Positions 1-60,556 of a DNA stretch of 64,000 nt are shown piece after piece. Within the stretch, counting starts at the first letter, position 1, and each line of letters starts with the position of its first letter. Below the pieces are notes generated by a model that did no database searches, was not told the DNA's origin, and saw nothing but the letters and a program-made list of their open reading frames with translations. Location: positions 416,839 to 480,838 of IMG/VR virus record IMGVR_UViG_3300028558_000791. The stretch is one strand, 5' to 3'. The translations under genes were made by a program, and so were the position numbers.

Positions 1-318
1 CGTTATTGCAATCAACCATGTCGCCTAATCACAAAAGGCTCTTTGCCCGATGGACTGGCAGAAAACAGAATCGCCCACTGCGACCCATGCAATGTCAAAT
101 ACTTCGATAGATTCCATGTCCTGGTCTGCAATATCAAAGATACCGAATACTCCGTCTCCTATATGGATGACCACCCAAACCACTGGACTTCTATCTACCA
201 ATACAACAAAAAGGAAAGGCCCAGGGTGCATGATATCGCCCTGAGCTTCCAATTCCATGTTAGGTTCACCCCAGCTAACTTCAAAGAAAAGCTAAAGATA
301 TACCTGCTGTTCAGTTAG
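1..318 (+). CDS. Hypothetical Cys-containing protein, probably 5'-truncated by the window edge
   Basis: Frame is open from base 1 (RYCNQPC...HCDPC) to TAG 318; converges on the 315..1013 gene. Confidence 0.5.
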   Translation, partial: RYCNQPCRLITKGSLPDGLAENRIAHCDPCNVKYFDRFHVLVCNIKDTEYSVSYMDDHPNHWTSIYQYNKKERPRVHDIALSFQFHVRFTPANFKEKLKIYLLFS

Positions 319-1013
319 TTAGGACAGTTAGTCAACACAGGTCCACCATCAGGTACCTGACTGCTATTAACTGGCTCCCCATCCACACAATAGTTCAAGT
401 TCCTAAGCTCCAAATCAAAGAAAGCAGATACCTTAACCATGGTATCATAATCAATGCACTGAAACCTGGCTCGACTATAATGCGGATACATCAACCTCTG
501 ACCCACATGACCCGATCCCATCAAATGACCAATCTCATGTAATGTCACACCATAAACATCATCATTCCCAAGTCTATCACGTACTAAGTACATGTGATGT
601 CCACCAACTTGCTCGCAAAAACCAATGGTCCAATAACCCTTGTCGTTAATCGGTACCATCTTGTTCTTACTGTCAACCTTCAAGAATAACCACCCGCCAC
701 TATTCACCTGAGTAACTATCTTATCAATCTCCATATCAAACTTAGTATCAACTACCTTCAATTTAACATAGCCATTCATAGCAAAGTTCCAAGCGTTAAT
801 AGCATCGTCAATAGCTAACTTGTCAGCTTCCCCAAAATTAATATCAATCCATATCGGTATCTCCCTAATAGGAGCCTCCTCAAAGACCGGTACATGTGTG
901 TAATGATACAAACCTAGCTTAGGATTACTAGGATTTAATGTAACACCAGCGCAACCAACTATAATAGCCGCAATAATAACAACTATTAATAAGACAATAG
1001 CAGTCATCTTCAT
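315..1013 (-). CDS. Matrixin/metzincin-like zinc metalloprotease, predicted lipoprotein
   Basis: HEIGHLMGSGH = HExxHxxGxxH followed by a Met-turn (LMYP); hydrophobic N-terminus ending IIVGC. Confidence 0.8.
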   Translation of the reverse strand: MKMTAIVLLIVVIIAAIIVGCAGVTLNPSNPKLGLYHYTHVPVFEEAPIREIPIWIDINFGEADKLAIDDAINAWNFAMNGYVKLKVVDTKFDMEIDKIVTQVNSGGWLFLKVDSKNKMVPINDKGYWTIGFCEQVGGHHMYLVRDRLGNDDVYGVTLHEIGHLMGSGHVGQRLMYPHYSRARFQCIDYDTMVKVSAFFDLELRNLNYCVDGEPVNSSQVPDGGPVLTNCPN

Positions 1014-1036
1014 GATAACACCTAAAATAAGGTTAC

Positions 1037-1939
1037 TTACTTCTTGACCGATTTGTTGTTGTTGCTGTCCAAAAAACTTGCAATCGTGTCACGGTGTACA
1101 AAGAATCCAACCTCTGGAGCACGAGTAATACGAACCGCAATGCCAATTAACTCGCCATAATCATTGAAACATCCACCACCAGAGTTACCATAGAAAATTG
1201 GTGACTGTACCTGCATGTATGGTCCCCTAGCATCATCCTTGCCAGCACTCAAACGCTTGTAATGATCAGCATCACGGTAAGCAGCAACCTGACCACCCAT
1301 GTACGTCCAGTATAATCCAGTCTGATGACCAACTACATTAACATGCTCGCCAAGTGCCGGTGTCTCACTAGCAATACGAGCTACCTTGTGTGCCGGTACT
1401 AAATCTCCCTGCGCCTCAAGTAACGCTAAATCATGCGCTTCATCAAATGCAACCGCCTTGCTCAAATGCCAGCCAGATGGCTCGGCCGCAACTCCCATAA
1501 CTTCCTTCTCTACAATGTAGTGAATCTTAAGACCCTTCTTCTCTACCTTGTCAGCCTCTTGTGGTCCTCCACTGCCACCACCAAATAGCTTCTGAAGCAT
1601 CTCTTGAAGACTCTTAGGCTCATCATTGCTGCCTTCCTTGCGCTTGTCAAGCCTCTCCTGCTGCCATTCAAGCTCTCCCTCAATACAATGATTAGCTGTG
1701 AGAATGTGAGTCTCATCAACCCAAACTCCAGTACAAAATGGACGATAACCAGTAGTAATAGTGGTCTCCTTATCGTCGTGGTATCCCATCAATGCAACAG
1801 TGGCTCCACCTTCCTGTATGATTAAATCGTGTGCGCTCAGCTTCGACTTAGGTATTACCCCAGAGTCTTTTAAACTAGCACAGCCGCCTAAAGTAACACT
1901 CAAAATAACTAATAGTAGCAAACTGAAATAACGTTTCAT
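1037..1939 (-). CDS. Trypsin-like (S1) serine protease, predicted lipoprotein
   Basis: LTANHC (His), HDLALL (Asp), GNSGG (Ser); lipobox-like LGGC. Confidence 0.85.
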   Translation of the reverse strand: MKRYFSLLLLVILSVTLGGCASLKDSGVIPKSKLSAHDLIIQEGGATVALMGYHDDKETTITTGYRPFCTGVWVDETHILTANHCIEGELEWQQERLDKRKEGSNDEPKSLQEMLQKLFGGGSGGPQEADKVEKKGLKIHYIVEKEVMGVAAEPSGWHLSKAVAFDEAHDLALLEAQGDLVPAHKVARIASETPALGEHVNVVGHQTGLYWTYMGGQVAAYRDADHYKRLSAGKDDARGPYMQVQSPIFYGNSGGGCFNDYGELIGIAVRITRAPEVGFFVHRDTIASFLDSNNNKSVKK

Positions 1940-2047
1940 GAAACCCCGACGAGGTTCAGTAGGCTACCGTACTTGGCAACCCAAGATTACAAAGATACAA
2001 GAATACATACCAAACCGTTACTCAAATGTTTCTTATACATTGTATAA

Positions 2048-2617
2048 TCAGTAATTTATATTACTATCTTTATAACCTATTGCGTCAATTAACAATGGCT
2101 GAGTTGCATCAATTACCTTCTCACCTCTTAAGAGTATAGCCGTATGATACTCCCTACTACAACCATCATCCGACCAGTCATGCCAGCGAGCCTCAAATTG
2201 GCTGCTAGAGAGACGTGCATACCGCCCAGCCACGCTGGGGTCCATTAGGTCCACAAAACCATTTATAAGGTTAACCAGGACCACGTAATGACCGTCTTCC
2301 CAGACCTCCGAGAAGTCCGTATCAGGCCCGTAATTACCCCAAGCTTGAATATTAAGAATACATGTGTATCCAGAATCTAAATACTCTTTAAGATCAGTTA
2401 TCTTTAGGTTATTACGATACAACACTTCTAACCCATAAGATACTGCTAGTTCTATAATGCTATAGCCAGAAGTACCATCGCAGTTTGTTCCAAGTAATGG
2501 GTATAACTCTGGTTCGCGCCCTGACCAAACTCCCCAATAGTATAAACAACTAGCTAAAGATGCTGCCCCACAACTGTAATCATAGGCTTGTCTAACTAGA
2601 GGAACATAGGTTGGCAT
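2048..2617 (-). CDS. C39-like papain-fold cysteine peptidase
   Basis: VRQAYDYSCGAA, GHYVVL, LMDP; likely start is MPTYVP at 2617. Confidence 0.8.
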   Translation of the reverse strand: MPTYVPLVRQAYDYSCGAASLASCLYYWGVWSGREPELYPLLGTNCDGTSGYSIIELAVSYGLEVLYRNNLKITDLKEYLDSGYTCILNIQAWGNYGPDTDFSEVWEDGHYVVLVNLINGFVDLMDPSVAGRYARLSSSQFEARWHDWSDDGCSREYHTAILLRGEKVIDATQPLLIDAIGYKDSNINY

Positions 2618-2972
2618 GTTGAATCTCCTGCTATTGAGAAAGTGAGAGAGTAAAAGAGAGAGAGAGGGTACAATCTGCCTGTATGCCATTATAGCCCAAG
2701 CGTATGCCTAACTGCAAAAACATATGTTTATAATGCGATAAGATGCTTTGAGAAATACCTAATTTATATTTGCTAGTTTTGTCGTACCTATATCCTGAAT
2801 AGACGCTAATAGGACACCCATATCGTCCATATGGGATACCAGAGCACACTCTAACTGCCCCAGATAGTCACTTGATGGTCACTTGATAGCTGTTAGACCC
2901 CTATTTGGGAGGCGAACTGCCACCGCGCACGACAATGGCCCACACTTTTCCAGTAGGGGTATAATGGGGCTT

Positions 2973-19105: not shown

Positions 19106-19142
19106 ACCCGCTCCCATTCACGAACCGCAAACGAGGAAGACC

Positions 19143-19343
19143 ATGGACAACACCACACCGCCCCGTGATCGTCGAGTGACTGTCTCCGACCTGAAGCGTC
19201 AGAAGAAGGCGCTGACCAAGGCTCTCCGCAAGGAGCGCAAGCGTCAGGATGAGATCGCCAAGCTCCGTAAGGAGAACGAGGATCTCTACATCCAAGTCTC
19301 TCGTGTCAGAGACGCGAGGAACAACACTGGTGAGTGCTGCTAA
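19143..19343 (+). CDS. Small coiled-coil basic protein
   Basis: GAGGA RBS, 11-mer at 19111. Confidence 0.7.
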   Translation: MDNTTPPRDRRVTVSDLKRQKKALTKALRKERKRQDEIAKLRKENEDLYIQVSRVRDARNNTGECC

Positions 19344-19344
19344 C

Positions 19345-19473
19345 ATGAAGCGTCACCTGCAACGTGGTTACACGTTGGTCGAGCTGGTCACCATCCTTGG
19401 ATTGTTTGGTCTCTTCCTGGGGAGTCTTGCTCTCCTTGGAGTCATCATTCACTTCATCATCAAGCTATGGTGA
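19345..19473 (+). CDS. 42-aa type IV prepilin-like mini-peptide
   Basis: MKRHLQRG-YTLVEL-hydrophobic helix: class III signal with G|(F/Y)xxxE. Confidence 0.7.
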   Translation: MKRHLQRGYTLVELVTILGLFGLFLGSLALLGVIIHFIIKLW

Positions 19474-19480
19474 GTGTGAC

Positions 19481-19711
19481 ATGATCGAGATTCGAGAGGG
19501 CATGCGGATCAGGTTCAAGTCCATCGACGGAACTGGGCCAATTCACAATAAGACTGGTATTGTCCAGCCTGGAGTTGGATTGCCCAATCACCCTCACAAA
19601 GTCATCTTCGATGGAGAAGTAGATGTCTCTTATTGTGGTAGGGCCTACTTGGTTCCTATCGACGATAAAGGGCATCCGCTGGAAGATTCTGAAGGAGAAA
19701 CATTCCAATGA
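19481..19711 (+). CDS. Small SH3-like hypothetical protein
   Basis: Gene-packed; GMRIRF...TGIV pattern. Confidence 0.55.
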   Translation: MIEIREGMRIRFKSIDGTGPIHNKTGIVQPGVGLPNHPHKVIFDGEVDVSYCGRAYLVPIDDKGHPLEDSEGETFQ

Positions 19712-20187
19712 GCTGCGGACCGTGTAACTGTAGTGACTGTCGCATCGACCGATTGGAAGAGGACGAGAAGCCGCCTCCCATTCGCAGGATGACGTGGGAC
19801 GAAGCTGCGCCGGCCAACGAGACTCAGGCCAAAGCGTGGATGGGTTACATCAACGAGGTGTATGCCCAGTATCCGACCAATACCATCCCGATGCAAGCGA
19901 TGCTCAGCATGGTCTGTCAGAAGATTCCCGGTCTCAAAGCCGAGAACTATCTGGGAGTCATGGCTTCAGTGGAGCGATTCATTCGTGAGTCGCCTAGCTT
20001 GGAGCTTCGCAAGGGCAAGAATGGTGGAGTCTTTCGCAAGACTCTCTACATGGATCTACATCCCATGACGGGTGTGCCGGACATGATTACCGGCAAGTTG
20101 ACAGACAACTACACATGTGGTTGCGGCAACACCAAGCTCAACAGGACTGAGAAGTCTTGCTGGAAGTGTGGCGCGGCAATCACATGA
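19708..20187 (+). CDS. Winged-helix-like paralogue flanked by Cys clusters
   Basis: EVYAQY..IPM...SMVCQK...EN...RKGKNGG; CGPCNCSDC and CGCG...CWKC. Confidence 0.75.
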   Translation: MSCGPCNCSDCRIDRLEEDEKPPPIRRMTWDEAAPANETQAKAWMGYINEVYAQYPTNTIPMQAMLSMVCQKIPGLKAENYLGVMASVERFIRESPSLELRKGKNGGVFRKTLYMDLHPMTGVPDMITGKLTDNYTCGCGNTKLNRTEKSCWKCGAAIT

Positions 20188-20342
20188 ACGACTTCGACAA
20201 GCGCTTCAAGGCTCATCAGAGTCTCATGGCCAAGGGCATCACTGTCTTCTGGTTCATCTGGTTCTTGGCGGCATGCGCAGGATTGGCCGGTTCGATCGCC
20301 CTGGTGTATGTCGCCATTCACTTCCTCGCCAAGTTCTGGTAA
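20184..20342 (+). CDS. Small membrane protein
   Basis: ATGA overlap; hydrophobic. Confidence 0.6.
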   Translation: MNDFDKRFKAHQSLMAKGITVFWFIWFLAACAGLAGSIALVYVAIHFLAKFW

Positions 20343-21618: not shown

Positions 21619-21808
21619 GTCTCCCATTCACGGGTGAGATGGGCAAGCGCAAAGAAGAGAAGAAGAGACTCAAGAAAAAAGCTCAGTTCTTTTACATTGA
21701 GGGACACATACTCAATGAGAAGACGGGCATACTGGAACCGTACAAGAAGAAAGTATATTGGTATCCAGTAGGGCGCTGCGGAACGTAGCTCCCATTCACG
21801 GTGAAGCA

Positions 21809-30052: not shown

Positions 30053-30087
30053 AGCTACGAGTGAGATTACCTATCAATCTCGTAGCT
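30053..30087 (+). promoter_or_regulatory. Conserved leader hairpin (second copy at 32743-32772)
   Basis: AGCTAC-GAGT-GAGATT-ACCTATC-AATCTC-GTAGCT. Confidence 0.6.
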
Positions 30088-30123
30088 CCAATGACTTCCA
30101 ACTCAACCGCCACGGAGATTTTC

Positions 30124-32208
30124 ATGACTCTCAACGCCACCAACATCCTTCTTCGTCACAACCTCATCGACATCACTCCGACCTCGGGTGAGGATATCCA
30201 GCTTGCTGGTGACGAAGCGCGGGCTACCGTGCTGATGAATCTCGCCTACTACGGCAGGGGACTCAGTACGGAAGGTTACAAGGCGTTCCTCCAGCTTGGC
30301 AAGGGATCCATCGTCGACTTCTGGGCTCGCATCGAACCCGAGTTGAAAGACATTACGGGAGCCGATCGTAAGATGGGCGACTTCGTTGTCTACAAGAACT
30401 TCCCCAAGGAGGTTCTCGACAAGGACGCAGCGGCCTACTGGATTCCCCAGCTCCTCATGTACTGGGGATTCCCCAAGGACTACTTCACTGACCCGGTTGT
30501 TGCTCGTCCCAAGATGGATAAGCAGCCTGCCGTCACGGTTCTCAAGCTGTCCAAGAAGGATACGCTCAAGAGCATCCTCGATTCTCACGTGCAGTCTCCT
30601 GCTCGTTGGAAGGATCAGGAGTTTCAGGAAGTGGTTTTCCTTTCGGAAACCCTGCCTGTCAACTTCGCCAAGCTGGTGTTCAAGGAGAACCTCGTCAAGC
30701 TGGCGACTCACTTCATGACCAGTGGCCGCAAGGTCAACATCACCACGGCAACCGACGTTCTTCGTCTGGCTGCTGGCCTGAGTGATGGTGACGTGTCGCT
30801 CCGAACCAAGTTCAAGTTCAAGTCTTTCAAGAAGCCGATGCGTCGGTTCCTCCTTTCCATCCTGGAAGGGTGTGCCAACTTGGAAGAGGACGTGGCACGC
30901 CGACCGGAACTGTTCAAGCGCCTGTTGCACAACCTGCATGCAGGTGACTTCAAGCGTTCCTACCCCCGAGTCATCAAGGTGGCCGATGATCTCTACAAGG
31001 ATCGTCTCGTCACTTTCAATGGCAAGGTGGAGAGCATGCTTCTCGCCAAGAACTCCGAGGTTCTCGACGTGCTCTCGACTCGCCCTGGTGACTTCCGAAG
31101 GCGCCTGGTTCACACCTTGGACCTTTTCGGCAAGCAAGCAGCCCAGGCTTTCACGTCTGCTGACGTGTTGAGCAAGTTGACGGTCAATCAGCTCGTTGCA
31201 ACCCGTTCCTTTCTGGGAATGGCCAACGAGAGGAAGGCTCGCATCTTCCCGCCCAAGGGGAATTGGAGTCTTGCCAAGTTTGGTGAGCCCAGGCCGGTCA
31301 CCAAGTCCAGTCTAAAGATCATCGACAAGGCTCTTGCTGCTGCTCTTCGTGAGCGAGTGCCTGCTGTTGGTGTGCTCGACCCTGCCACCAGCAAGGTCAA
31401 GTTGCCGAACAACGGTGAGGAGGGACCGTACACTCGTGGTACTGTCTTCCCGATTCCGGAAGGAACGGACTTCATCCGTACGGCTTCCTACTGGAACGTC
31501 AACGCCAAGGGCTACACCTGGTTCGACAATGGCTGGAACTTCTTCAGCGATGATTGGAAGCCGGTGGGCGCTTGCTGTTGGAGCAGCCCCAAGTTCCCCG
31601 GTCATCGTTGGGACATGAAGGCCAACGACCAGAACACTGGAGCGGTCTTCTCTGGAGACCCGACCATTGCCAAGGGCAAGGCGTGTCAGATGATCGACCT
31701 GTATCCCGAGCAGCTTCGTGCTGCTGGTGTCAGGTACGCTGTCTGGAGCGTTCTCTGCTACTCGGGAATGACCTTCAACGATGCAGAGGAAGTCTTCGCT
31801 GCATTCCAGTGGGGCAAGGATGCCAATAAGGGTAGGCTTTTCGAGCCGGCCCGTTGTCAGCTTGCCATCCCTCTCAAGGGTCAGCAGTTGACCAAGTACG
31901 TCGTTCTCATCGACCTCGATAAGAACGAGATGATCTATCTGGATGCAGGACTCAAGAGCAGCGTTCGTAGCGCTGAGTCGAATGGTCCTCTTCTCCAGAA
32001 GAATCTTCCGGCCTTCATGGAATACATCAAGGCACTTCCCTCTGTCCATGACCTCTTCCGAGAGTCTGTGGATGCAGGTAGCAACACTAAGATCCTCTAC
32101 TCCGATAAGGATGCGAGCCTTCGAGGTGAGTCTGCCTACGTCTTCAAGCAGGAGAACAAGGACAGCAAGTACAAGTCGGTGGACCTGAACGGTCTATTGG
32201 CGAAGTGA
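30124..32208 (+). CDS. ROT/TROVE-like helical repeat protein with C-terminal TerD-like domain (RING-less relative of the Prok-RING4-associated family)
   Basis: NLAYYG, YKNFP, TATDVLRLA..LSDGDVSL, RPGDFRRRL, then a beta-rich TerD-like part (SYW, FSGD, QMIDL, RYAVWSV.CYSG); GGAG RBS supports ATG 30124. Confidence 0.7.
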   Translation: MTLNATNILLRHNLIDITPTSGEDIQLAGDEARATVLMNLAYYGRGLSTEGYKAFLQLGKGSIVDFWARIEPELKDITGADRKMGDFVVYKNFPKEVLDKDAAAYWIPQLLMYWGFPKDYFTDPVVARPKMDKQPAVTVLKLSKKDTLKSILDSHVQSPARWKDQEFQEVVFLSETLPVNFAKLVFKENLVKLATHFMTSGRKVNITTATDVLRLAAGLSDGDVSLRTKFKFKSFKKPMRRFLLSILEGCANLEEDVARRPELFKRLLHNLHAGDFKRSYPRVIKVADDLYKDRLVTFNGKVESMLLAKNSEVLDVLSTRPGDFRRRLVHTLDLFGKQAAQAFTSADVLSKLTVNQLVATRSFLGMANERKARIFPPKGNWSLAKFGEPRPVTKSSLKIIDKALAAALRERVPAVGVLDPATSKVKLPNNGEEGPYTRGTVFPIPEGTDFIRTASYWNVNAKGYTWFDNGWNFFSDDWKPVGACCWSSPKFPGHRWDMKANDQNTGAVFSGDPTIAKGKACQMIDLYPEQLRAAGVRYAVWSVLCYSGMTFNDAEEVFAAFQWGKDANKGRLFEPARCQLAIPLKGQQLTKYVVLIDLDKNEMIYLDAGLKSSVRSAESNGPLLQKNLPAFMEYIKALPSVHDLFRESVDAGSNTKILYSDKDASLRGESAYVFKQENKDSKYKSVDLNGLLAK

Positions 32209-60481: not shown

Positions 60482-60556
60482 GGCCCCATCTTCTAGCGGC
60501 TAGGATGCGAGACCTTCACTCTCGTCACACGGGTTCGAGTCCCGTTGGGGTCACCA
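60482..60556 (+). tRNA. tRNA-Glu (anticodon UUC) with encoded CCA
   Basis: GGCCCCA/TGGGGTC acceptor, CGAGA-CCTTCAC-TCTCG, ACGGG-TTCGAGT-CCCGT, ACCA; C at position 33. Confidence 0.85.

What the first reader, a model, noticed from the sequence alone, without database searches (positions are those of the whole stretch)
19345..19473. Pilin-like mini-peptide consisting only of the prepilin signal and N-terminal helix
Seen: MKRHLQRG|YTLVELVTILGLFGLFLGSLALLGVIIHFIIKLW. Established: G|F/YxxxE is the prepilin peptidase (PilD) site, and type IV pili are common phage receptors and drive myxobacterial S-motility. Inference: a dominant-negative pilin or PilD decoy for superinfection exclusion or motility control.
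Basis: partly seen in the sequence, partly recalled or inferred. Interest (0 to 1): 0.6.

Follow-up and report, generated by a model that had tools for sequence, protein, structure and literature searches.

The report
Phage mini-peptide with a prepilin signal
The 42-residue ORF is a real, conserved gene of a huge uncultured phage. It belongs to a previously uncatalogued family of tiny phage membrane peptides, about a fifth of which start like a bacterial pilin, so they may tamper with the host's pilus or secretion machinery.

Summary

**It is not a chance ORF.**
- A 45-aa homologue in an unrelated metagenome contig keeps Q-R-G-Y-T-L-V-E-L-V unchanged, although 8 of those 10 codons differ synonymously.
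- A 35-aa homologue in a 34% GC contig starts M-E-K-G|F-T-L-I-E-L.
- Both homologues have strong ribosome-binding sites.

All these peptides end H-F-x-x-K-[F/L]-W-stop. Searching for that ending alone recovered at least 106 distinct phage peptides of 25-74 aa. One is a paralogue 840 bp downstream in the same operon.

**Link to prepilins.**
- 21 of the 106 carry a prepilin-type N-terminus, against 0 of 838 other small hydrophobic ORFs in the same contigs.
- Pfam N_methyl scores reach 31.5 bits in the family. The window's copy scores 20.1, just under the 21.2 cut-off.
- No Pfam or PHROG model covers the family as a whole.

**Context and function.**
- The genes sit in early or replication regions, not in lysis cassettes.
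- The host is unknown, and a myxobacterial link is unsupported.
- The phage carries no prepilin peptidase or pilus genes.
- Interference with type IV pili or type II secretion, by a headless pilin mimic working as PfsE does, is the best guess but is untested.

The parts
19345..19473 (+). Gene for the 42-aa mini-peptide (stop codon included)
   Evidence: Searches give the ORF. One search shows codon usage favours this frame. Searches give homologues of 45 and 35 aa with their own ribosome-binding sites. One search shows 18 synonymous-only codon differences against 13 replacements.
19345..19368 (+). Prepilin-type leader M-K-R-H-L-Q-R-G. The predicted prepilin-peptidase cut is after Gly8.
   Evidence: Read directly from the sequence. 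The Pfam N_methyl alignment covers residues 4-28. Q-R-G is identical in the 45-aa homologue.
19369..19398 (+). Y-T-L-V-E-L-V-T-I-L, the mature N-terminus with Glu at +5 (19381-19383)
   Evidence: Y-T-L-V-E-L-V is identical in the L006 homologue. Across Q-R-G-Y-T-L-V-E-L-V, 8 of 10 codons differ synonymously. The same Q-R-G-Y-T-L-V-E opens more than 30 ordinary pilin-like proteins, mostly 150-600 aa.
19450..19470 (+). C-terminal family signature H-F-I-I-K-L-W
   Evidence: It is shared with the paralogue, L006, L040 and at least 106 distinct viral peptides. The aromatic at -11, outside the search pattern, is Tyr in 64% and Trp in 12% of members. The window's copy has Gly there.
19329..19334 (+). 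GGTGAG, a weak Shine-Dalgarno-like element 10 nt before the ATG. The upstream gene's stop ends 1 nt before the ATG, which suggests translational coupling.
   Evidence: The same TGGTGAGTG precedes the next gene's ATG at 19481.
20184..20342 (+). Paralogue of 52 aa with the same C-terminal signature (H-F-L-A-K-F-W). Its N-terminus is degenerate (K-G-I-T-V-F-W, no Glu at +5).
   Evidence: The alignment is ungapped, 13 of 38 identical, and both peptides end at the same residue. phmmer gives E 0.006 among 10,061 genome ORF segments. Pfam finds no N_methyl match.
19111..19121 (+). Nearest upstream copy of the repeated strand-specific motif CTCCCATTCAC, a probable promoter or 5' UTR element of the unit that holds both family members
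   Evidence: There are 54 copies in the window against 1.55 expected, 53 of them on the + strand. The commonest distance to an ATG is 21 nt. The next exact copy is at 21621.
19143..19343 (+). Upstream co-directional gene of 66 aa, lysine/arginine-rich, with only weak coiled-coil-type Pfam hits below threshold
19481..19711 (+). Downstream co-directional gene of 76 aa with no family match
   Evidence: It was called as a gene on the source contig.

Best explanation
The ORF is a translated gene for a bitopic inner-membrane peptide. It lies in a block of small, same-strand genes marked by a repeated promoter-like motif, probably the early region of a roughly 480-kb uncultured phage.

It belongs to an uncatalogued phage family of one-helix peptides (25-74 aa) that end Y-x-x-x-H-F-x-x-K-[F/L]-W at the carboxy terminus.

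The window's copy is one of the roughly 20% whose N-terminal half is a canonical class III (prepilin) signal. The most likely course of events, all of it inferred, is this:
1. The peptide inserts with its N-terminus in the cytoplasm and its C-terminus outside.
2. The host prepilin peptidase cleaves it after Gly8 and N-methylates the new N-terminus.
3. This leaves a 34-residue 'headless pilin', meaning the membrane-embedded first half of a pilin helix without the globular head.
4. With Glu5 and the pilin-like N-terminus, it docks where pilins dock, at the type IV pilus or type II secretion assembly platform.
5. The conserved aromatic, His and Lys C-terminal patch at the periplasmic face then blocks or poisons assembly.
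6. The infected cell loses pili or secretion. Rival pilus-dependent phages are shut out, much as the 30-residue PfsE of Pf4 does by binding PilC.

Shown here: the gene is real, conserved and selected, and the family exists and is enriched for prepilin signals. Inferred: topology, cleavage, target and effect.
For: **The gene is real**
- ORF and frame.
- The exhaustive HMMER search found a 45-aa homologue (E 6e-4 against 1.8 billion proteins).
- That homologue is 68% identical in protein but only 60% in DNA, with 18 synonymous-only and 13 replacement codon differences. dS is saturated and dN is 0.31.
- The homologues have canonical ribosome-binding sites.

**The prepilin signal is real**
- Pfam N_methyl gives 20.1 bits for the window's copy and 22.3, 22.7, 23.2, 21.9 and 31.5 bits for five relatives, against a cut-off of 21.2.
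- 10 of 68 members match at E <= 0.01.
- NCBI names WP_223191138.1 a prepilin-type protein.
- 12 of 68 family members carry the motif against 0 of 838 background small hydrophobic ORFs (Fisher P about 1e-14). With the larger set the count is 21 of 106.
- The same opening Q-R-G-Y-T-L-V-E heads more than 30 ordinary pilin-like proteins, mostly 150-600 aa.

**The phage must rely on host enzymes**
- The phage record has no Peptidase_A24 gene and no secretion ATPase.
- The one member with a known host sits in a Paraburkholderia genome that has three Peptidase_A24 genes.

**Context fits an early or host-takeover role**
- Members lie beside RecT, SbcC-like and DNA polymerase genes, not lysis genes.
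- The window's copy lies in a block studded with a promoter-like repeat.

**Precedent**
- PfsE is the smallest Pf4 protein. It sits in the inner membrane with its N-terminus in the cytoplasm, has an aromatic motif, binds PilC and blocks pili and superinfection (PMC8764522).
Against: - About 80% of the family, including the paralogue in the same operon, has no prepilin motif. The conserved C-terminal function therefore need not involve pili or prepilin peptidase.
- Prepilin-type members do not cluster together by their mid-helix sequence (0.19 observed against 0.19 expected).
- No conserved neighbour gene points to a target.
- The window's copy is just under both curated thresholds and has Tyr rather than Phe at +1.
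- The host is unknown.
- No transcript data exist.
- The complex prediction with P. aeruginosa PilD gave no verdict.
Confidence: 0.4

Rival explanations
1. The family is a general membrane-active or regulatory micro-peptide whose target has nothing to do with pili. It could be a small helix that modulates another inner-membrane complex, the membrane potential or lysis timing. In this reading the prepilin-type N-terminus in a fifth of members only fixes topology and trims the leader.
For: - Most members and the in-operon paralogue lack the prepilin motif yet keep the C-terminal signature.
- Prepilin-type members are scattered through the family.
- No pilus genes lie nearby or anywhere in the phage.
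- Family loci span GC 0.24-0.67, including members in Thermoactinomycetaceae, Patescibacteria and Chitinophagales assemblies.
Against: - A buried Glu at +5 is costly in a membrane helix and is not needed for topology. Even so, the full G|[F/Y/W]-T-x-x-E-[L/I/V] motif recurs in 21 diverged members and is held under synonymous change.
- None of 838 other small hydrophobic ORFs has it.
- The genes are not in lysis cassettes.
Confidence: 0.33
2. The peptide is a substrate decoy. It is made in bulk early in infection and saturates the host prepilin peptidase. Host pilins and pseudopilins then stay unprocessed and no filament or secretion piston forms.
For: - The leader and cleavage site are canonical.
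- The peptide has no other domain.
- The phage lacks its own peptidase.
Against: - A decoy would not need the strictly conserved C-terminal motif or Glu+5. By established knowledge, Glu+5 is not required for cleavage.
- The complex prediction gave no verdict.
- No expression level is known.
Confidence: 0.1
3. The peptide is a true structural mini-pilin. The host machinery polymerises it into the pilus or pseudopilus core and so changes the fibre's properties, for example its receptor surface.
For: - The N-terminal 20 or so residues are what pack in the core of pilus filaments.
- By recalled knowledge, natural short pilins exist (Flp, Geobacter PilA-N).
- The motif is complete, including Glu+5.
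Against: - The mature length of 31-34 residues is shorter than any known pilin and has no head or C-terminal extension to stabilise a fibre.
- The family signature is shared with members that cannot be pilins.
Confidence: 0.07
4. It is a chance ORF in an intergenic gap, not translated.
For: - The JGI gene caller did not call it.
- The window's copy has only a weak ribosome-binding site.
- No RNA data exist.
Against: - Homologues are conserved under synonymous divergence and have strong ribosome-binding sites.
- Codon usage favours the frame.
- The family has at least 106 members.
- The ORF fills the 137-nt gap between its neighbours almost exactly.
Confidence: 0.02

Closest known systems
Type IV pilins and type II secretion pseudopilins (class III signal peptide; Pfam PF07963 N_methyl, NCBIfam TIGR02532)
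   Same: - A short basic leader ends in Gly.
- An aromatic residue sits at +1, Thr at +2 and Glu at +5, followed by a hydrophobic helix of about 20 residues.
- The identical opening Q-R-G-Y-T-L-V-E heads many ordinary pilin-like proteins.
- Relatives pass the Pfam threshold.
   Different: - There is no globular head at all, and the protein ends inside or just beyond the membrane helix.
- The C-terminus carries its own conserved motif.
- It is encoded by phages with no pilus genes.
- The window's copy falls just below both curated thresholds.
PfsE of Pseudomonas filamentous phage Pf4 (PMC8764522)
   Same: - It is a phage-encoded inner-membrane peptide of about 30 residues with its N-terminus in the cytoplasm.
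- It has a conserved aromatic cluster.
- A C-terminal tag abolishes its function.
- It blocks type IV pili and superinfection.
   Different: - PfsE has no prepilin signal, and its motif is Y-x-W-G-W in mid-helix.
- It comes from a temperate inovirus.
- No sequence relationship was tested or is expected.
- PfsE's target (PilC) is shown by experiment. The target here is only guessed.
Phage pilus inhibitors Tip (D3112) and Aqs1 (DMS3)
   Same: They are small phage proteins that shut down type IV pili and exclude other phages (reviewed in PMC11436027; also mentioned).
   Different: They are soluble cytoplasmic proteins that act on the PilB ATPase. They are not membrane peptides and have no pilin mimicry.
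Naturally short pilins (Flp/Tad pilins; Geobacter PilA-N). Recalled knowledge, not tested here.
   Same: They are very small prepilin-peptidase substrates made almost entirely of the N-terminal helix.
   Different: - Flp uses a different cleavage motif (G|xxxxEY) and its own peptidase.
- Both are 45-60 residues when mature, are chromosomal and sit in pilus operons.
- Neither ends in the H-F-x-x-K-F-W signature.

Membership tests
Class III (prepilin-type) signal peptide proteins | A short, positively charged leader ending in Gly at -1 | tested here: met
   M-K-R-H-L-Q-R-G. The 21 prepilin-type relatives keep a leader of 3-10 residues ending in Gly, usually preceded by K, R, Q or N.
Class III (prepilin-type) signal peptide proteins | A hydrophobic or aromatic residue at +1 and Glu at +5, followed by about 20 hydrophobic residues | tested here: met
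   Tyr+1 and Glu+5 are followed by an uninterrupted hydrophobic stretch. The motif is conserved under synonymous change.
Class III (prepilin-type) signal peptide proteins | A score above the curated thresholds of PF07963 and TIGR02532 | tested here: not met
   The window's copy scores 20.1 against 21.2 bits and 12.5 against 16.3 bits. Five relatives pass PF07963 with 21.9-31.5 bits.
Class III (prepilin-type) signal peptide proteins | Cleavage and N-methylation by a prepilin peptidase (Peptidase_A24) | not testable with these tools
   The phage has no peptidase. The Paraburkholderia host of one relative has three. The complex prediction with LEP4_PSEAE gave no verdict.
Type IV pilins and pseudopilins (structural subunits) | A C-terminal globular alpha-beta head domain after the N-terminal helix | tested here: not met
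   The protein ends 34 residues after the predicted cleavage site. All family members are 25-74 aa.
Type IV pilins and pseudopilins (structural subunits) | Encoded with, or in a genome that has, the assembly ATPase, platform protein and peptidase | tested here: not met
   The 480-kb record has no PF01478 match and no PF00437 match above cut-off. No conserved neighbours were found in 68 loci.
H-F-x-x-K-[F/L]-W phage mini-peptide family (defined here) | A single hydrophobic helix that ends with the H-F-x-x-K-[F/L]-W motif directly before the stop codon | tested here: met
   The window's copy ends H-F-I-I-K-L-W. There are at least 106 distinct members in viral contigs.
H-F-x-x-K-[F/L]-W phage mini-peptide family (defined here) | Similarity beyond the motif that was searched for | tested here: inconclusive
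   Across the family, the aromatic at -11 is Tyr in 64% and Trp in 12% of members, and Gly is enriched at -14 and -15. The window's copy has Gly at -11. It is clearly homologous to P0003 (E 6e-4 library-wide) and weakly to its paralogue (E 0.006).
PfsE-like pilus-blocking phage peptides | Binds PilC and abolishes twitching and pilus-dependent phage infection | not testable with these tools
   The resemblance is functional only. No experiment was possible.

The most novel reading that the evidence does not exclude
Phages from very different hosts (contig GC 0.24-0.67) share a one-helix 'warhead' peptide with a fixed H-F-x-x-K-F-W end. Either repeatedly or ancestrally, they have fused it to a perfect copy of the pilin N-terminus. 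The host's own prepilin peptidase and pilin-docking sites would then deliver it into the type IV pilus or type II secretion platform. This would be the first viral mimicry of the class III signal pathway and a new, very small, membrane-embedded inhibitor of pili or secretion.
Probability: 0.3. Interest if true: 0.8.

Novelty: new variant of a known kind. Interest (0 to 1): 0.64.

Why it matters
[quoted passage not shown] The known phage-encoded inhibitors (Tip, Aqs1, PfsE) are few and come mostly from Pseudomonas phages.

A family of more than 100 phage peptides, a fifth of them headless pilin look-alikes, would add three things:
- A new and easily synthesised class of probes or inhibitors for the membrane steps of pilus assembly.
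- A case of a virus borrowing the host prepilin peptidase.
- A concrete function to test for one of the many tiny unannotated ORFs in huge phages.

The case also shows that gene callers miss such genes. The JGI call on the source contig skipped this one.

Tried and rejected
- **Word-index protein searches.** The peptide and the two-member alignment found only themselves.
- **Viral-contig protein scan.** `search for related loci` with the two-sequence alignment confirmed nothing. The family appeared only when I searched for the C-terminal motif as a degenerate DNA pattern.
- **Cultured phages.** megablast of 5 kb around the locus found nothing. tblastn with the 42-aa and 29-aa peptides also found nothing, probably because of the low-complexity filter.
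- **PHROGs.** No family fits the peptide or the 68-member set.
- **ESM Atlas.** No usable hit.
- **Complex prediction.** The run with P. aeruginosa prepilin peptidase (LEP4_PSEAE) scored 0.00. The tool's verdict is 'no answer', so I count it neither for nor against.
- **Sequencing runs.** Only DNA runs from rhizosphere and peat metagenomes hold the stretch, and none is RNA. I did not use `read laying`, so expression is untested.
- **Conserved neighbours.** Clustering of flanking ORFs found none outside closely related phage groups.
- **Clade test.** The nearest-neighbour test for whether prepilin-type members form a clade gave no signal. Fourteen helix residues probably carry too little information.
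- **Promoter and terminator scan.** The sigma-70 and terminator scans found nothing near the gene.
- **Host inference.** The terminase and a 715-aa protein give only distant hits (26% to assorted phages, 41% to Xanthomonas jumbo phage XacN1), so I name no host.
- **Integration hypothesis.** I considered whether the high-GC block is an element integrated at the tRNA. I found no flanking direct repeat apart from the dispersed promoter-like motif.

Full report
**1. The observation**

ATG is at 19345 and TGA at 19471-19473 on the + strand, giving 42 codons.

- The product has an eight-residue basic leader ending in Gly.
- Then come Tyr-Thr-Leu-Val-Glu and an unbroken hydrophobic stretch to the C-terminal Trp.
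- Pfam's N_methyl model matches residues 4-28 at 20.1 bits, against a gathering score of 21.2 (E 4.4e-4).
- NCBIfam's TIGR02532 gives 12.5 bits against 16.3.
- Both are near misses, not passes.

It is the only N_methyl match in six frames of the whole 480,838-bp record. It is also the only regex hit with a proper leader and helix.

**2. Where it lies**

The window is the last 64 kb of an IMG/VR record labelled 'provirus' and rated 100% complete. The record is cut from a 498,445-bp rhizosphere-metagenome contig.

- The record carries a terminase-like gene near 233 kb, only 26% identical to those of assorted phages.
- Window genes have jumbo-phage relatives. A 715-aa protein is 41% identical to one of Xanthomonas phage XacN1. 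There is also an RNA ligase, a RadC-like protein, an AAA ATPase and a DUF7275 protein.
- I take the record for a huge phage of unknown host. Nothing points to myxobacteria.
- The phage has no prepilin peptidase and no secretion-type ATPase above threshold.

Bulk GC is about 0.42, but it jumps to 0.55-0.65 at window position ~3000 and stays near 0.5 for the next ~58 kb. This block is studded with a strand-specific motif, GCTCCCATTCACGG.

- There are 54 copies in the window against 1.55 expected, and 53 are on the + strand.
- Genome-wide the count is 60 on + and 0 on -, with 52 inside the window.
- The commonest distance to an ATG is 21 nt.
- It looks like a promoter or 5' UTR element of a block of small, probably early, genes.

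The nearest copy upstream of the target is at 19111-19121, and the next exact copy is at 21621. The predicted unit runs from 19143 to about 21600. Its genes abut or overlap. The target starts 1 nt after the previous stop, and GGTGAG lies 10 nt upstream.

**3. Is it a gene?**

Codon usage favours the frame: +0.33 bit per codon against -0.48 and -0.14 for the shifted frames.

The word-index search found only the peptide itself. The exhaustive HMMER search of 1.84 billion representatives found one relative, P0003 (45 aa, E 6e-4). It lies on a 7-kb metagenome contig of small same-strand genes (L006).

- The two peptides are 68% identical, but their DNA is only 60% identical.
- 10 codons are identical, 18 differ synonymously only and 13 change the residue.
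- dS is saturated and dN is 0.31.
- In Q-R-G-Y-T-L-V-E-L-V, 8 of 10 codons differ and no residue does.
- P0003 sits behind AAGGAGA.

The metagenome scan added L040, a 35-aa peptide on a 34% GC contig, behind AAGGAGG. It starts M-E-K-G|F-T-L-I-E-L and ends exactly like the window's peptide.

The other 33 scan hits are ordinary pilin-like genes, mostly 150-600 aa, that open with the same Q-R-G-Y-T-L-V-E. So that opening is a genuine pilin N-terminus.

Two nearly identical short contigs from other samples show that the same phage recurs. The gene is therefore real and under purifying selection, most tightly on the prepilin-type motif.

**4.

The window's peptide, P0003, L040 and a 52-aa ORF 840 bp downstream (20184-20342) all end H-F-x-x-K-[F/L]-W-stop.

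The downstream ORF aligns without gaps over its last 38 residues (13 identical). Its phmmer E-value is 0.006 among 10,061 ORF segments of the genome. Its N-terminus reads K-G-I-T-V-F-W, with no Glu at +5.

I turned the C-terminal motif alone into degenerate DNA patterns and scanned the collections.

- After filtering for a hydrophobic helix, at least 106 distinct peptides of 25-74 aa (median 39) remained.
- Almost all come from viral contigs with GC 0.24-0.67. Several contigs exceed 200 kb.
- Among 185,579 species genomes, only five loci hold family members. These lie in a Paraburkholderia isolate genome and in assemblies labelled Thermoactinomycetaceae (with an identical copy in an unclassified bacterial MAG), Patescibacteria and Chitinophagales.
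- Outside the searched positions, the family shows an aromatic at -11 (Tyr 64%, Trp 12%) and Gly at -14 and -15.
- No Pfam or PHROG model covers the family.

**5. Link between the family and prepilin signals**

21 of the 106 distinct members have a leader of 3-10 residues ending in Gly, usually preceded by K, R, Q or N. It is followed by [F/Y/W/I]-T-x-x-E-[L/I/V].

- Pfam N_methyl matches 10 of the first 68 members at E <= 0.01.
- Five relatives pass the threshold with 21.9-31.5 bits.
- Among 838 other small hydrophobic ORFs in the same 97 viral loci, none has the motif. That is 12 of 68 against 0 of 838 (Fisher P about 1e-14).
- Nine of those 12 came from the scan for the C-terminal pattern alone. 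The other three are the window's copy, P0003 and L040, which was found by similarity to the target.
- NCBI already labels the Paraburkholderia member (WP_223191138.1, 40 aa) a 'prepilin-type N-terminal cleavage/methylation domain-containing protein'.
- That genome has three Peptidase_A24 genes.

Prepilin-type members do not group together by their mid-helix residues. The motif was therefore either gained and lost often, or the helix is too short to tell.

**6. Context elsewhere**

Flanking genes show no conserved partner. Where neighbours can be named, they are RecT-like or Bet-like annealing proteins, an SbcC-like protein, a metal-dependent hydrolase and a DNA polymerase. These are replication or early regions, not lysis cassettes. 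Two loci, the window and L264, carry two copies.

**7. Mechanism**

Shown here:
- A selected, one-helix peptide family of phages.
- A strong enrichment of complete class III signals within it.

Inferred from established knowledge of prepilin processing:
- Gly-1 is the critical residue for cleavage.
- Glu+5 is needed for methylation and assembly rather than for cleavage.
- The first ~20 residues are the membrane anchor and filament core.

From this I infer that the window's peptide inserts with its N-terminus in the cytoplasm, is cut after Gly8 and methylated by the host enzyme, and remains as a 34-residue headless pilin. A buried Glu is costly, and topology alone does not need it. Its conservation argues that the peptide uses pilin-specific contacts.

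The best precedent is PfsE of Pf4 (PMC8764522).
- It is the phage's smallest protein, about 30 residues long.
- It is an inner-membrane peptide with its N-terminus in the cytoplasm and an aromatic motif.
- It binds PilC and blocks pili and superinfection.

I therefore favour interference with the type IV pilus or type II secretion platform. The pilin-like half would act as the address and the conserved C-terminal patch as the effector.

The main rival is that the family's target has nothing to do with pili and that the signal only sets topology. That 80% of members lack the motif keeps this rival nearly as likely.

A pure peptidase decoy or a polymerising mini-pilin is less likely, and a chance ORF is excluded.

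**8. What could not be settled**

- No RNA run holds the stretch.
- The one complex prediction (with LEP4_PSEAE) returned 'no answer' and is not evidence either way.
- The host is unknown.
- Searches of cultured phages found nothing, possibly because the low-complexity filter masks the helix.

**9. Verdict**

The prepilin signal is real and selected. The pilus-interference role is plausible but untested. The myxobacterial framing is unfounded.
- The larger result is a previously uncatalogued phage mini-peptide family with a fixed C-terminal motif, of which this is a prepilin-type member.
- I rate it a new variant of a known kind, a headless, phage-borne class III signal peptide protein. It is of fairly high interest because simple experiments would decide it.

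Noticed in passing
window 3141-61656, densest 3.1-25 kb (for example 17225, 19111, 21621, 22207): The strand-specific motif GCTCCCATTCACGG occurs 54 times in the window against 1.55 expected, 53 times on the + strand. Genome-wide it is 60 on + and 0 on -, with 52 inside this window. The commonest distance to an ATG is 21 nt. It is probably an early promoter or a shared 5' UTR element of the phage.
   Followed up: partly
window ~3000 (GC 0.44 to 0.55-0.65) through ~62000; G000 1-420 kb has GC ~0.42: A block of about 58 kb has much higher GC than the rest of the 480-kb record, and it coincides with the motif-rich array of small + strand genes. This could be an acquired region, a distinct expression class or an assembly chimera. 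No flanking direct repeat was found.
   Followed up: partly
window 20184-20342 (+): A second family member of 52 aa lies in the same predicted operon. It has the C-terminal signature but a decayed prepilin motif (K-G-I-T-V-F-W). It is a natural control for experiments. Locus L264 also carries two copies.
   Followed up: yes
L001 9162-9290 (identical to window 19345-19473): The JGI gene call on the source contig left this ORF uncalled, in a 137-nt 'intergenic' gap. The ENA call on a second sample's contig (L002 690-818) included it. Mini-genes of this family are likely under-annotated.
   Followed up: yes
window 60482-60556 (+): A tRNA-Glu (anticodon TTC) is the only tRNA in the window. It lies near the right end of the high-GC block.
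   Followed up: no
window 315-2689 (-): In the low-GC part before the block, three minus-strand genes include a trypsin-like peptidase (1037-1939) and a Peptidase_C39-like protein (2048-2689). The strand and composition differ from the rest of the window.
   Followed up: no
G000 as a whole; source contig Ga0265326_10000001: IMG/VR labels the record a 'provirus', trimmed from a 498,445-bp contig by about 17.3 kb on the left and 0.3 kb on the right. Yet it carries a terminase-like gene at ~233 kb and jumbo-phage genes throughout. The label may be a boundary-calling artefact on a huge phage genome. No terminal repeat was found.
   Followed up: partly
L186 (Paraburkholderia panacisoli contig5), the same peptide as in L110 (IMG/VR UViG of 67 kb): This is the only family member with a named host. 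It is a 40-aa prepilin-type peptide (WP_223191138.1) in a predicted prophage of a genome with three Peptidase_A24 genes. That makes it a cultivable system for testing.
   Followed up: partly
window 30061-32208 (+): A 715-aa protein of unknown function (phrog_33734) is 41% and 38% identical to proteins of Xanthomonas jumbo phages XacN1 and Xoo-sp13. These are the closest cultured relatives seen for any window gene.
   Followed up: no
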